A stretch of DNA of 64,000 bases, from the IMG/VR virus record IMGVR_UViG_3300027736_001324, positions 1 to 64,000 of that record. One strand, 5' to 3'. Both the position numbers and the translations under genes were made by a program. Positions 23,183 to 36,549 of the stretch are shown one piece after another. The notes beneath the pieces are model-generated. The model saw only the letters and a program-made list of their open reading frames with translations. It did not search any database and was not told the DNA's origin. Every line of letters begins with the position of its first letter. Position 1 is the stretch's first letter.

Positions 23183-23209
23183 AAAAAAGGGTGCCGAAGC
23201 ACCCTTTTT
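23183..23209 (-). terminator. Intrinsic terminator after the major capsid gene (possibly bidirectional)
   Basis: Minus strand AAAAAGGGTGC-TTCG-GCACCCTTTTTT. Confidence 0.9.
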
Positions 23210-33680: not shown

Positions 33681-34502
33681 ATGACAAACCCACTAAGACA
33701 ATACTTTCGTAGACCTGCACTTTATCTAACATTACCTAGTAGAGGTAAATTTTACCCTGAAGGAGCATTAGAAATGCCGGAAAACGGAGAACTTGCGGTA
33801 TATCCTATGACTGCAATTGATGAGATTACTAGTAAAACCCCCGATGCATTGTTTAACGGTAACGCAGTACCTGAAATTATCAAAAGTTGTGTCCCGGGAA
33901 TAAAAGACCCGTGGGCAGTTCCCAGTGTAGATATGGATGCTATTTTGGTTGCTATTCGTGCTGCTACTAGCGGTAATGATTTGGAAATCAGTAGCACTTG
34001 TCCTAAATGTGAAGAAGAAAGTAAGTATAATATCAACTTGGGATTTTTACTAGGTAGTATTAAAGCCAGCGACTATAATGAAGTGTTTCACATGGGGGAA
34101 TTAACGCTTAAATTTAAACCATTAAATTACACTCAGGTCAATGAAGGCAATATGGGGCAATTTCTTATACAACGTGAAATAAACGGATTAGAAGGAATGA
34201 CAGATGATACTGAAAGAAGCAAAGTATCCGGTGAAATTATGAAAAAATTGACCCAGATGAATATGGAATTAATCGGTTCAGTAATCGAATCTATAACAAT
34301 CCCAACTGAAGTGGTAACTAATAGAGAATTTATTAGTGAGTTCCTATCAGGATGTGACAGGGCTACTTATGAAAAAATTCGTCAACATGTATTAAGACTA
34401 AGAGATAGTTCAAATATTAAACCACAACATATCAAATGTGTAAGTTGCTCACATGAATATGATCAAGCACTAGTGTTAAACGTTTCTGATTTTTTCGAGT
34501 AA
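33681..34502 (+). CDS. gp26: Baseplate hub assembly / tail chaperone protein, gp26-like
   Basis: LTLPSRG..YP, PMTAIDE, AIRAAT, two CxxC motifs, C-terminal DFF. Confidence 0.8.
   Translation: MTNPLRQYFRRPALYLTLPSRGKFYPEGALEMPENGELAVYPMTAIDEITSKTPDALFNGNAVPEIIKSCVPGIKDPWAVPSVDMDAILVAIRAATSGNDLEISSTCPKCEEESKYNINLGFLLGSIKASDYNEVFHMGELTLKFKPLNYTQVNEGNMGQFLIQREINGLEGMTDDTERSKVSGEIMKKLTQMNMELIGSVIESITIPTEVVTNREFISEFLSGCDRATYEKIRQHVLRLRDSSNIKPQHIKCVSCSHEYDQALVLNVSDFFE
34490..34496 (+). other. Candidate -1 ribosomal frameshift heptamer T TTT TTC
   Basis: X XXY YYZ pattern in correct phase two codons before the stop; -1 frame is open into 34550-34726. Confidence 0.65.
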
Positions 34503-34549
34503 GGCTTCTGTCGCTTATCCCCGAGAAGATACAGAAGCTGCTAGACAGC

Positions 34550-34726
34550 ATGGATGAAGAAACAACAACAATTAAGAAAAATGCATTAAAGTTTTCTTGG
34601 TATATGCGGGGCGGAGTATCCTATGAGGATGTACTTAATATGTCTGAATCGGAAAGAGAAGCTATAAGTCAAATCATAGATGAGAACTTGGAAACTACTA
34701 AGAAAACTCAGATGCCATTCTTCTAA
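34550..34726 (+). CDS. Small gp51-like protein (58 aa; missing from the ORF track); may be made as a frameshift fusion
   Basis: MDEETTTIKKNALKFSWYMRGGVSYEDVLNMSESERE...MPFF; position immediately after the gp26-like gene. Confidence 0.7.
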   Translation: MDEETTTIKKNALKFSWYMRGGVSYEDVLNMSESEREAISQIIDENLETTKKTQMPFF

Positions 34727-34734
34727 TCCGTAAT

Positions 34735-35220
34735 TATTCATTTATCAACTTTGGGATGTTTCATTAAGAGATGAACTTCGTTCATCTAAGAACTCACTTC
34801 GTTCGTTCTTATTTCTTTCAGTATACGGAATCGTTTAAGACTTTAATTGTATCGGATATATATTGCCGATTAGAAGCCATGGTAGTGCAAATTTGCACCA
34901 CCAATGGGAAAGGTATGTTTGCCATGACCGTCGTCCAGTGTTATCTATCCCCCAATTAATCGCCTATTTCTGACACTAACTGCTACCGGTTGCTCTGTAA
35001 AGTATTATGGGACTGTAGTGAAGCTAACAACTTTAGTTGTTTCTTCCGCAACGCACATTCTATGAAATCAAGATAAAGTATTCATAGACTTGTTGAAGGT
35101 TCGCTTTGCCGATTGCCTTCTCGGTATACCCATAGTTATTGCTAACTATGCTTACTCCAGATCCGTCAGCACAGCACTACCTGTACAAACTCAAGGAGGA
35201 CTCACAAACTGAGCCAACGA
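34735..35220 (-). ncRNA. Candidate large structured non-coding RNA / origin-like region
   Basis: Longest gene-free gap in the window; at least 7 hairpins; G-U pairs and a GCAA tetraloop work on the minus strand. Confidence 0.55.
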
Positions 35221-35224
35221 ATTT

Positions 35225-35785
35225 TTATGTATTAATGGTTAAAAGGGAATCTTTGTTTTCTGTTGACTTGGTGTCTATTGTACTAGAATATGTTTTTAAT
35301 AAGTCTGTATTATGTAGGAAGAAACTATCAAATTCAAAAATCATCCAGTCTCCGTGTTTTTGAGATGTATAGTATGTGAAGTTATCCGCAACCCATGTTA
35401 GTTTGCTTTGTACACAAACATAGCGACCTTTACGGGTAATTTTAATAAATAAAATATTAATGTCATTTGTGTCCTCTACTGCTAGTAATTGTCCTAGCCA
35501 AGTATCTAATTGCTTACATTCCCCAGTAAGTAATAGATGAAACGGGAAGTCAGCATAATTTTTACACTCAGCATTGAAATGCGCCCAAGTGTCAGGTGGA
35601 GTTATATCACCCTTAAAAGATTTGGCTTGATTCCCGTCTAAAAAGTTCTTTCGATGTGAATTAGCGCCCCCAATATAAGCCCCTGAGTTTGGAACACGAA
35701 CAAATGGCTCCCCGTAAGTATCGCTGAGAAATTTTGCAATTTCTCTCTCATAAGAACTACCTTTTGTTTTACTTTTTGAAGTCAT
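35225..35785 (-). CDS. PD-(D/E)XK nuclease, Hjc-like Holliday junction resolvase
   Basis: KGSSYERE...RVPNSGA...GDI...AECK motif order. Confidence 0.75.
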   Translation of the reverse strand: MTSKSKTKGSSYEREIAKFLSDTYGEPFVRVPNSGAYIGGANSHRKNFLDGNQAKSFKGDITPPDTWAHFNAECKNYADFPFHLLLTGECKQLDTWLGQLLAVEDTNDINILFIKITRKGRYVCVQSKLTWVADNFTYYTSQKHGDWMIFEFDSFFLHNTDLLKTYSSTIDTKSTENKDSLLTINT

Positions 35786-35805: not shown

Positions 35806-36549
35806 TCAGGCACTGATAAATTTACACTTGTCACCGTGAAACATTGTATAATGATTTTTTGCTATTGTCCGATTACAATGTTCACATACTTTTTGATTTT
35901 TTAGTTTCTTCATAGGATTATTTTCACCTGAGTTTTTTAATCTTGTCATTGCTTTATTGTAATCAGACGCAGGAATTCCATACATTGGATTTTTATCACC
36001 CCTCATTCGGTCAGACAATTTTGAATTTCCAGTGAGAGATTTGCTAATATTTTCATTATGAGAAGCTGGTCTATTTTTTGCATATTTTTGCACACCTATA
36101 CTCTGATTCTGTTTTCTAATATCATCATGCTTTTTCCCATAATGGGGAGACTTCTCTCTAACTTTACCATACATGGGATTTTTATTACCTGTTCTAGCTT
36201 TACTTTTACGTTGTCTAGTAATTGAATTTTCTTTAACACCGTACCGATTGTATAATCCGTCTCCGTTGTGTTGGTTAAAACTCATTGCATCATCTTTGGC
36301 ATTGAGTGATTTAAGAAGTACACGCTCTAACTCGGCAACATATCCTGCCTCGCCTATGTGTAATATTTCAAAAGTCCACTCATTTCTGTTTTTCAATATC
36401 ATTGGTTTGACTTCTTTACTGGAACATATATATTCTTCATGGCGTGATGGATTCCAACCGTTGCGTATTTTAGATCCAATATACCACCGTCCGGATGGAA
36501 TATGAATCCACTTATAGATATAAGGTATAGTTTTGTTATAAATAGTCAT
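35806..36549 (-). CDS. GIY-YIG-like (Seg-type) homing endonuclease with NUMOD3-like repeats
   Basis: YIYKW...WYIGS, later LE...FN; three NPM repeats; CEHC...HGDKC; AAGGAG SD. Confidence 0.75.
   Translation of the reverse strand: MTIYNKTIPYIYKWIHIPSGRWYIGSKIRNGWNPSRHEEYICSSKEVKPMILKNRNEWTFEILHIGEAGYVAELERVLLKSLNAKDDAMSFNQHNGDGLYNRYGVKENSITRQRKSKARTGNKNPMYGKVREKSPHYGKKHDDIRKQNQSIGVQKYAKNRPASHNENISKSLTGNSKLSDRMRGDKNPMYGIPASDYNKAMTRLKNSGENNPMKKLKNQKVCEHCNRTIAKNHYTMFHGDKCKFISA

What the first reader, a model, noticed from the sequence alone, without database searches (positions are those of the whole stretch)
34769..34810. Tandem cGAAg triloop hairpins with GA/GA mismatch: ssDNA-type structure at the 3' end of the RNA candidate
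Seen on minus: AAGAAC-GA-AC-GAA-GT-GA-GTTCTT abutting AGATGAAC-GAA-GTTCATCT. Established: c-GNA-g triloops and tandem sheared G-A pairs are exceptionally stable in single-stranded DNA. Inference: a DNA-level signal (priming, origin or nuclease site) at the convergence point of two transcription units, possibly exposed by an R-loop from the adjacent RNA.
Basis: partly seen in the sequence, partly recalled or inferred. Interest (0 to 1): 0.6.

Follow-up and report, generated by a model that had tools for sequence, protein, structure and literature searches.

The report
Conserved 3' twin-hairpin of phage RNA
The two abutting hairpins are real and strongly conserved: they close the 3' end of a large structured non-coding RNA found in over a hundred jumbo T4-like phages, so they most likely act in RNA; the proposed single-stranded-DNA signal has no direct support but is not excluded.

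Summary
On the minus strand, hairpin B (34810-34788: 6-bp stem, tandem G·A/A·G, 2-bp stem, GAA loop) abuts hairpin A (34787-34769: 8-bp stem, GAA loop). Thermodynamics alone is unremarkable (z about -2), but comparison is decisive. The module recurs in over 90 distinct relatives: 98% of cells paired, 15 of 16 pairs with double compensatory changes, the 5' GA kept in 68 of 72, and B's cap always G..A.

It lies 40 nt downstream of a roughly 365-nt covarying RNA core with no Rfam match, which follows a PDDEXK resolvase gene. The only stem wobbles are U·G on the minus strand (5, against 0 A·C), and B folds better on that strand in 86 of 96.

The same module also closes sequence-unrelated non-coding regions: a Polynucleobacter-1 (RF01718) RNA, three paralogous elements in Xanthomonas phage XaC1, and one in Agrobacterium phage Atu_ph07. 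There co-directional genes follow it, so the convergence point is incidental and a plus-strand-only terminator is excluded.

Best reading: an RNA-level 3'-terminal module that acts as an exonuclease barrier and/or recognition platform. It is not a canonical intrinsic terminator, because no U-tract follows it. The DNA or R-loop idea has no positive evidence.

The parts
34769..34787 (-). Hairpin A: 8-bp stem with a GAA triloop closed by C-G; last structured element of the module
   Evidence: Across 73 distinct aligned modules, 7 of its 8 pairs show double compensatory changes and 100% of cells are paired. Loop classes: GAA 46, GTA 8, GTAA 4, GTTA 4, others 10.
34788..34810 (-). Hairpin B: 6-bp outer stem, tandem G.A/A.G (5' GA 34804-34803; 3' GA 34795-34794), 2-bp inner stem, GAA triloop (34800-34798); abuts hairpin A with no linker
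   Evidence: The 5' GA is kept in 68 of 72 distinct modules. The 3' side is GA in 40 and GAA in 18. All 48 simple caps are GNA or GNNA. The inner 2-bp stem covaries (A-U 48 / G-C 18; C-G 58 / U-A 5). B is more stable on the minus strand in 86 of 96.
34811..34850 (-). A/U-rich spacer between RNA core and hairpin B; variable in sequence and length among relatives
   Evidence: Alignment A2 shows no conserved columns here, and the length varies among relatives. Composition over relatives is 45% A, 32% T, 11% G, 12% C. There is no match elsewhere in the genome.
34851..35215 (-). Core of a conserved structured non-coding RNA: first hairpin 35215-35200, invariant CCUCCUUGAG 35199-35190, invariant 14-mer 34888-34875, last small hairpin 34870-34851
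   Evidence: No Rfam match. DNA is more conserved than the flanking proteins. In the RNAalifold consensus, 39 of 63 pairs have compensatory changes, and several pairs are predominantly G.U on this strand. More than 119 viral contigs hold the core pattern.
35225..35785 (-). PDDEXK_15 / T5 D14-like putative Holliday-junction resolvase gene, immediately upstream of the RNA on the same strand
   Evidence: Pfam PF24608 at 5.5e-28 and PHROG 244. Annotated as resolvase in PA5oct and Phosso. Upstream of the RNA in nearly all loci that have enough flank.
34550..34726 (+).
   Evidence: Conserved at 49-100% aa in all loci. It has no family hit, so the gp51 assignment is not verified.
33681..34502 (+). 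gp26-like baseplate hub gene
   Evidence: Pfam T4_baseplate at 5.8e-22 and PHROG 150.
34728..34746 (-). Conserved motif GATAAATGAAYAGTTACGG between hairpin A and the orf58 stop; one mismatch from the phage's late-promoter-like consensus GATAAATA
   Evidence: alignment of tails. GATAAATA lies within 60 nt upstream of 19 of 195 long ORFs, and ATAAATA upstream of 32 against 1.7 expected. Present only in the window-like clade.

Best explanation
The two hairpins are the conserved 3'-terminal module of a large structured non-coding RNA, and they work as RNA. The RNA is encoded on the minus strand just downstream of a small nuclease (resolvase) gene. Its layout is a core of about 365 nt, a poorly constrained A/U-rich spacer, then hairpin B stacked directly on hairpin A. 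Shown here: the module is under strong selection for pairing on the RNA-sense strand; the tandem G.A/A.G step and the G..A caps are conserved as such; the module marks the 3' boundary of the non-coding element in every genomic context found. Inferred: the coaxially stacked, GNA/GNRA-capped pair of hairpins forms a compact end that stops 3'-to-5' exonucleases. It would define and stabilise the 3' end of the RNA after read-through or endonucleolytic processing. Its sheared G.A platform may also serve as a recognition surface for a protein or for the RNA core. It is not a canonical Rho-independent terminator on the RNA strand, because no U-tract follows it. In this clade it probably also hinders the convergent late gp26 operon as a side effect.
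For: The sequence and fold are as described. The module is unique in the 263.7-kb genome, and the phage's ordinary terminators are a different kind: G+C-rich stems flanked by A and T runs. A pattern scan found over 119 viral contigs with the RNA core, and the gene order is near-universal: gp55, gp47, gp46, resolvase, RNA, module, then convergent orf58 and gp26. B abuts A with no gap in the great majority of 93 distinct tails. On model-based alignment A7 (73 distinct rows), 98.0% of cells pair against 75% in shuffles and 33-48% when slid. Fifteen of 16 pairs carry double changes, and 0 of 500 shuffles reach any measure. Non-Watson-Crick cells include 5 U.G and no A.C or C.A, which points to the minus strand. 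B is more stable on that strand in 86 of 96. GA/GA(A) and G..A caps are conserved. The adjoining core is a real RNA on the same strand, with 39 of 63 pairs compensatory and several pairs predominantly G.U. The same module (model R1) closes other long non-coding regions: L026, whose 5' part is RF01718 at 105.7 bits; L015 and L028; three XaC1 elements; Atu_ph07; and the flank of a Polynucleobacter-1 row in the 2010 alignment.
Against: There is no transcript evidence. No U-tract follows hairpin A (2.9 U in 10 nt), so how the 3' end forms is unknown. In L015, L026 and XaC1 a co-directional gene starts 20-60 nt after the module, so transcripts may run through it. About three quarters of the tetraloops (GATA, GTTA, GTCA) have a pyrimidine at position 3. 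That is not the RNA GNRA class, but it does fit the stable DNA class d(cGNNAg) (class assignment from my own knowledge). The pair counts come from an alignment fitted to the model's structure, which leans toward that structure.
Confidence: 0.55

Rival explanations
1. The module is a functional domain of the RNA: a dedicated binding site for a phage or host protein, or a docking element for the core. Under this view its job is not to make or protect the 3' end, and its terminal position is secondary.
For: The unpaired GA/GA(A) and G..A nucleotides are conserved in sequence, beyond what a stabilising hairpin needs. The base of A (AG[A/U]UG...CA[U/A]CU) is conserved in most clades. In some clades B is expanded into nested GA modules instead of being simplified. 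The module is retained although the cores are not demonstrably homologous. A small nuclease gene lies just upstream in three RNA types.
Against: No partner has been identified. In XaC1, B and the second hairpin are separated by 17 nt, so a fixed composite site is not universal. A's stem and loop are replaced entirely in some clades (GGGUCUUC with UUU; AAGUUCUC with GUA).
Confidence: 0.15
2. The element is a bidirectional terminator, or a terminator read on the plus strand, for the convergent late operon gp26-orf58. Its minus-strand features would then be incidental.
For: It lies at the convergence point in over 100 loci, including those where an extra gene is inserted after orf58 on the orf58 strand. 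The hairpins also fold on the plus strand. The 10 nt before B are A-rich, which makes a U-rich tract after B on the plus strand: 5.35 of 10 against 4.5 expected from the spacer's composition.
Against: On the plus strand the conserved GA/GA becomes a destabilising UC/UC, and B' folds at only -4.9 kcal/mol. B is weaker on that strand in 86 of 96. The consensus terminator scan does not call it. Wobbles occur only on the minus strand. In L015, L026, XaC1 and Atu_ph07 the module has no convergent gene. The A-richness is barely above the spacer's background.
Confidence: 0.12
3. This is the reader's hypothesis: a DNA-level signal. While the RNA gene is transcribed, or when an R-loop persists, the displaced non-template strand carries the same sequence as the RNA. 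It would fold into very stable d(cGNAg)/sheared-GA mini-hairpins that mark a priming, helicase-loading, origin or nuclease site.
For: The loops fall into the classes known to be unusually stable in DNA, closed by C-G: GNA triloops and GNNA tetraloops with a pyrimidine at position 3 (16 of 22 tetraloops). Every GA step has the pyrimidine-GA-purine context of sheared DNA tandem pairs. The spacer before it is 77% A+T, like a DNA-unwinding element. The neighbours are recombination and replication genes: gp46, gp47 and a resolvase. XaC1 has three copies, as T4 has several origins. The stability classes and the T4 origin model come from my own knowledge, not from a tool.
Against: There is no positive evidence for single-stranded DNA. 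The element is continuous with a covarying, G.U-rich RNA on the same strand. Stems of 6-8 bp are too short to extrude from duplex DNA. A's loop can be UUU, AAA, UCU, CCU or ACC. There is no skew inflection at the site. A sequence-invariant, 365-nt structured core is not required of an origin transcript.
Confidence: 0.1

Closest known systems
Polynucleobacter-1 RNA motif (Rfam RF01718; Weinberg et al. 2010, PMC2864571)
   Same: It is a freshwater/estuary metagenomic RNA of unknown function, reported as lying downstream of a small phage-like gene. In locus L026 it occupies the position that the window's RNA core occupies here: after a small nuclease gene of the gp46 cluster, ending in the same B+A module. 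The flank of one row of the published alignment ends in the module.
   Different: The window's core does not match RF01718 even at E up to 10. My 5'-domain model does not reach L026. The upstream gene is a SegE-like GIY-YIG protein there and a PDDEXK protein here. The published motif covers only about 141 nt of the 5' part, and the 3' module was not described.
Rho-independent terminators and 3' stabilising stem-loops of phage and bacterial transcripts
   Same: Stable hairpins at the end of a transcription unit, in this clade between convergent units. Stems covary while loops drift.
   Different: There is no U-tract on the RNA strand. Stems are A+U-rich. There are two stacked hairpins, with a conserved non-canonical G.A step. 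There is one copy per genome, whereas this genome's generic terminators are G+C-rich with A/T runs.
DNA mini-hairpins of the d(GCGAAGC) type and sheared tandem G.A pairs (my own knowledge)
   Same: These features are conserved in relatives.
   Different: Those are properties of oligonucleotides and of some single-stranded phage origins. Here the genome is double-stranded, the motif lies in a transcribed-looking RNA gene, and no evidence places it in single-stranded DNA.
R-loop origins (T4 oriF/oriG) and the ColE1 RNA II pre-primer (my own knowledge)
   Same: A transcript followed by an A+T-rich stretch, near recombination and replication genes. RNA II is likewise a long structured RNA.
   Different: No MotA-type middle promoter, no mapped R-loop and no origin evidence. 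The conserved element here is a hairpin module, not a hybrid-forming stretch.
Hammerhead stem II junction and kink-turn (tandem sheared G.A motifs)
   Same: GA, then a short helix and loop, then GA(A). This has the same local geometry as G8-A9 / stem II / G12-A13-A14 of the hammerhead.
   Different: The CUGANGA core and the cleavage-site helices are absent, and Rfam finds no ribozyme. There is no 3-nt bulge 5' of the GA, as a kink-turn requires.

Membership tests
Rho-independent (intrinsic) terminator, RNA (minus) strand | G+C-rich stem-loop | tested here: not met
   A has 3 G-C pairs of 8 and B's outer stem has 2 of 6. The consensus scan does not call it.
Rho-independent (intrinsic) terminator, RNA (minus) strand | Run of U immediately 3' of the hairpin | tested here: not met
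   Mean 2.9 U in the 10 nt after hairpin A over 93 distinct tails, which is about background.
Rho-independent terminator, plus strand (for gp26-orf58) | Stable hairpin directly followed by a U-tract | tested here: inconclusive
   A U-rich tract follows B' (TTATTTCTTTC in the window), but B' folds at only -4.9 kcal/mol with a UC/UC internal loop. The enrichment over spacer composition is small.
Polynucleobacter-1 RNA (RF01718) | Match to the Rfam covariance model at or above the gathering score | tested here: not met
   The window has no hit at the gathering score or at E up to 10. L026 scores 105.7 bits against a threshold of 37.
Polynucleobacter-1 RNA (RF01718) | Position downstream of a small phage-type gene; same 3' end | tested here: met
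   The supplement text describes the position downstream of a phage-like gene. L026 has the SegE-like gene, then the RNA, then the B+A module. The window has the PDDEXK gene, then the RNA, then the B+A module.
Single-strand DNA initiation or origin hairpins, d(cGNAg) type | C-G-closed GNA loop and sheared G.A pairs in the sequence | tested here: met
   This is a sequence-level feature only.
Single-strand DNA initiation or origin hairpins, d(cGNAg) type | The element exists and acts as single-stranded DNA (priming, helicase loading) | not testable with these tools
   Needs footprinting or nascent-strand mapping. Read data could not be obtained.
T4-type R-loop origin (oriF/oriG) | Middle-mode promoter followed by an A+T-rich unwinding element | tested here: inconclusive
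   The spacer is 77% A+T. No sigma-70-like or conserved promoter was found upstream; the 70 nt upstream are the end of the resolvase gene, followed by a short A-rich stretch.
Kink-turn | 3-nt bulge 5' of tandem G.A/A.G between a canonical and a non-canonical stem | tested here: not met
   The internal loop is symmetric 2x2 (40 of 72) or 2x3 with the extra A placed 3' of the GA (18 of 72).
Hammerhead ribozyme | CUGANGA ... GAAA core with three helices | tested here: not met
   Only the GA / helix / GA(A) part is present. There is no Rfam ribozyme hit.
Palindromic double-stranded operator for a dimeric protein | Conserved half-site sequence | tested here: not met
   Stem sequences are replaced entirely while complementarity is kept: four pair types at two positions of A. 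The loops and the GA step are asymmetric.

The most novel reading that the evidence does not exclude
The structured RNA would be a pre-primer in the manner of ColE1 RNA II or the T4 oriF transcript. The A+T-rich spacer would be the unwinding element. The twin hairpins would form on the displaced non-template DNA strand as ultra-stable d(cGNAg)/sheared-GA mini-hairpins that recruit the helicase loader, primase or a nuclease. That would make this a conserved replication or recombination initiation site of jumbo T4-like phages, present in three copies in XaC1.
Probability: 0.08. Interest if true: 0.9.

Novelty: new variant of a known kind. Interest (0 to 1): 0.6.

Why it matters
The module is a compact structural signature that can be searched for: GA, 2 bp, a G..A cap, 2 bp, GA(A), inside a stem and stacked on a second hairpin. 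It ties together several large phage non-coding RNAs of unknown function. These include the orphan Polynucleobacter-1 motif, described in 2010 and then not found in any sequenced purified phage. The module places such RNAs in over a hundred uncultured jumbo T4-like phages and in two cultured ones, Atu_ph07 and XaC1. That makes their function and their 3'-end biology directly testable at the bench. A dedicated, U-tract-free 3' module shared by RNAs with dissimilar cores suggests a common processing, protection or recognition step not yet described for phage RNAs.

Tried and rejected
- Rfam on the window, at the gathering score and at E up to 10, gave nothing relevant.
- No tRNA or tmRNA genes were found.
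- Megablast and blastn of the region against 50,697 isolate phage records gave no match.
- The simple promoter/terminator scan found nothing at the site.
- Coding reading: the plus-strand ORF 34771-34959 that overlaps the hairpins has no family hit. Its region is full of indels among relatives, so it is rejected.
- Guide-like reading of the variable spacer: there is no match of 14 nt or more elsewhere in the genome.
- Linking the window's core to Polynucleobacter-1, XaC1 or Atu_ph07 with a 5'-domain model (R2): only E = 0.13 in L015 and L028, and nothing in the others. Homology of the cores remains unproven; only the 3' module is shared. RNAalifold recovered just 6 pairs for R2, because MAFFT misaligned the first hairpin.
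- A long-range helix CCGUA/UACGG enclosing B+A is seen in the window-like clade only and is not general, so I dropped it.
- Promoter upstream of the RNA: the recurring GACACCAAGTCA motif lies in the 3' end of the resolvase gene and reads as a conserved peptide (DTKS/DTTS), not a promoter.
- PA5oct and Phosso gave only chance-level R1 hits.
- My first hairpin regex was faulty and was replaced.

Full report
**What is there.** The window is the first 64 kb of a 263.7-kb IMG/VR virus record. It is a jumbo T4-like phage. Portal gp20, gp26 baseplate hub, gp46/gp47 and the late sigma factor gp55 are all recognisable. The nearest isolates by portal protein, at about 51% identity, are Atu_ph07, Phosso, PA5oct and XaC1.

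- Hairpin B spans 34810-34788: a 6-bp stem, a GA/GA step, a 2-bp stem and a GAA loop.
- Hairpin A spans 34787-34769 and abuts B directly: an 8-bp stem and a GAA loop.

Both fold as RNA or as DNA on either strand. The energies are only about two standard deviations better than shuffles. The genome also holds 161 perfect hairpin hits with stems of 7 bp or more. The sequence alone would therefore not prove anything.

**Context in the window.** The hairpins sit in a 498-nt gap.
- On one side is the convergent gp26-orf58 pair on the plus strand (33681-34726).
- On the other is a minus-strand PDDEXK_15 (T5 D14-like) resolvase gene (35225-35785). That gene follows a NUMOD3 homing-endonuclease ORF, gp46, gp47 and gp55.
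- The gap has no Rfam match, no tRNA and no blastn match among isolate phages.

**Relatives.**
- Thirty viral contigs found through gp26 showed that the gap is better conserved as DNA than gp26 is as protein. In L007, for example, the DNA is 90% identical while gp26 is 59% identical.
- Gene order is near-universal: gp55, gp47, gp46, an optional endonuclease, resolvase, RNA, hairpins, then convergent orf58 and gp26.
- The core (35215-34851) is a real structured RNA on the minus strand. In the RNAalifold consensus, 39 of 63 pairs show compensatory changes, and several pairs are predominantly G·U.
- After the core comes an A/U-rich spacer with no conserved columns (window 34850-34811; 45% A, 32% T over relatives). 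Then come B and A.

**The module itself.**
- In 93 distinct tails, B abuts A with no gap in the great majority.
- I built a covariance model of the module (R1) and aligned 77 matches, 73 of them distinct.
  - 98.0% of cells pair, against 75% in column shuffles and 33-48% when the partners are slid.
  - 15 of 16 pairs carry changes on both sides.
  - No shuffle out of 500 reaches the observed values. This alignment is fitted to the model, which favours the structure.
  - An independent, model-free tabulation of hairpin A gave the same picture, with four pair types at two positions.
- The non-canonical parts are conserved as such.
  - The 5' GA is present in 68 of 72 distinct modules.
  - The 3' side is GA in 40 and GAA in 18.
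  - Every simple cap of B begins with G and ends with A (GAA 27, GATA 10, GTA 8, and others).
  - 65 of 72 loops of A do the same.
- Some clades expand B into nested GA modules instead of simplifying it.
- A's loop is less constrained: UUU, AAA, UCU, CCU, ACC and UGC all occur.

**Which strand.**
- Among non-Watson-Crick cells in the stems there are 5 U·G and no A·C or C·A on the minus strand.
- B is more stable on the minus strand in 86 of 96 distinct sequences.
- GA/GA is a recognised stable step, whereas its complement UC/UC is not.
- The adjoining RNA lies on the same strand.

Selection therefore acts on the minus-strand fold. These rows are related sequences, so the counts are not independent events.

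**Is it a terminator?**
- On the RNA strand, no. The 10 nt after A hold 2.9 U on average. The stems are A+U-rich. This genome's ordinary terminators look quite different, for example at 23184, 128089, 144176 and 152935.
- On the plus strand a U-rich tract does follow B'. However, B' is weak at -4.9 kcal/mol, and the enrichment over the spacer's own composition is slight.

**Other genomic contexts.** The decisive point is that the module is not tied to a convergence point. R1 also finds it in several other places.
- L026 (38.6 bits) and L015 (35.5 bits) are phages whose gp26 is only 35-41% identical. In both, a SegE-like GIY-YIG gene precedes a long non-coding region, and a co-directional gene starts about 33 nt after the module.
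- In L026 the 5' part of that non-coding region is Rfam Polynucleobacter-1, scoring 105.7 bits.
- The 2010 supplement says this motif lies downstream of a phage-like gene and was not found in any purified phage. One row's flank in its alignment ends in the same module.
- Xanthomonas phage XaC1 carries three paralogous intergenic elements of about 700 nt. Each ends in a B-type hairpin (stem, GA, AC, GTA, GT, GA, stem) and a second short hairpin capped by GAA, GTA or, in one copy, CTTTA. Each is followed by a co-directional gene.
- Agrobacterium phage Atu_ph07 has the module at the end of about 800 nt of unannotated, ORF-free sequence.
- A model of the window's 5' domain (R2) does not reach these other cores. 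What they share is the 3' module, and homology of the cores is unproven.

**Interpretation.** The simplest account is an RNA-level 3'-terminal module.
- Shown:
  - selection for the fold on the RNA-sense strand;
  - conservation of the G·A step and the G..A caps;
  - a constant position at the 3' boundary of long non-coding elements with dissimilar cores.
- Inferred:
  - The stacked hairpins stop 3' exonucleases and so define the mature 3' end after read-through or cleavage.
  - The sheared G·A platform is a recognition surface.

I put 0.55 on this.

The DNA idea keeps some weight for two reasons.
- The loop classes, including GATA, GTTA and GTCA tetraloops, and the pyrimidine-GA-purine contexts match stable DNA mini-hairpin rules at least as well as RNA rules (the rules themselves are from my own knowledge).
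- The non-template strand displaced by an R-loop would carry exactly this sequence.

No tool result speaks for single-stranded DNA, however.

**Novelty and limits.** I found no description of this module. The only paper in the library naming Polynucleobacter-1 is the 2010 survey. Searches for related terms found nothing relevant.

The module is best called a new variant of a known kind, a 3'-terminal structured element of a non-coding RNA. Its function and the function of the RNAs it closes are unknown. The assignment of orf58 as gp51 is unverified.

Noticed in passing
window 34851-35215 (-): A non-coding RNA core of about 365 nt with no Rfam match, found in more than 119 viral contigs. In the consensus, 39 of 63 pairs are compensatory. 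It carries the invariant segments CCUCCUUGAG (35199-35190, like the anti-Shine-Dalgarno sequence) and GCACUACCAUGGCU (34888-34875).
   Followed up: partly
L026:6329-6465 (-), L015, L163-L166: The same 3' twin-hairpin module closes a Polynucleobacter-1 (RF01718) RNA, three paralogous ~700-nt intergenic elements in Xanthomonas phage XaC1 (303186-303907, 117325-118055, 208922-209713), and about 800 nt of ORF-free sequence inside a 2-kb unannotated gap in Agrobacterium phage Atu_ph07 (267581-269606).
   Followed up: partly
window 35225-35785 (-); L026:6475-6927 (-); L015:7632-8066 (-); XaC1_228: The gene just upstream of each RNA type is a small nuclease: PDDEXK_15 resolvase, SegE-like GIY-YIG (PF19835) or HNH. 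This nuclease-then-RNA arrangement recalls other nuclease-associated RNAs. I found no evidence of a functional link.
   Followed up: partly
window 35806-36549 (-); L075, L077, L124, L135: Free-standing homing-endonuclease genes come and go around the locus. The NUMOD3 ORF of the window is absent from L001, L003, L004 and L007. A GIY-YIG ORF, or in L110 and L116 an ORF opening with a GDSH motif (possibly SGNH-type; not checked against a family library), is inserted between hairpin A and orf58 in other loci.
   Followed up: partly
window 34728-34746 (-): The motif GATAAATGAAYAGTTACGG is conserved in the window-like clade. It is one mismatch from the motif GATAAATA, which is strongly enriched upstream of long ORFs in this genome (19 of 195) and is probably the late promoter. 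Here it would point antisense into orf58.
   Followed up: partly
whole genome G000: Shine-Dalgarno-like words are not enriched upstream of long ORFs: GGAGG upstream of 1 of 195 against 2.3 expected, and AAGGAG upstream of 7. This hints at a host with weak Shine-Dalgarno usage.
   Followed up: no
L001 versus window, 35225-35785: L001 shares 99.9% identical RNA and gp26 with the window, but its resolvase is only 75% identical. This indicates mosaic recombination with a breakpoint at the RNA's 5' edge.
   Followed up: no
PA5oct 75667-77179; Phosso 229759-230772: Cultured relatives PA5oct and Phosso have stretches of 1-1.5 kb next to the resolvase gene with no annotated ORF or only tiny doubtful ones. 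These may hold further non-coding RNAs. R1 finds no module there.
   Followed up: no
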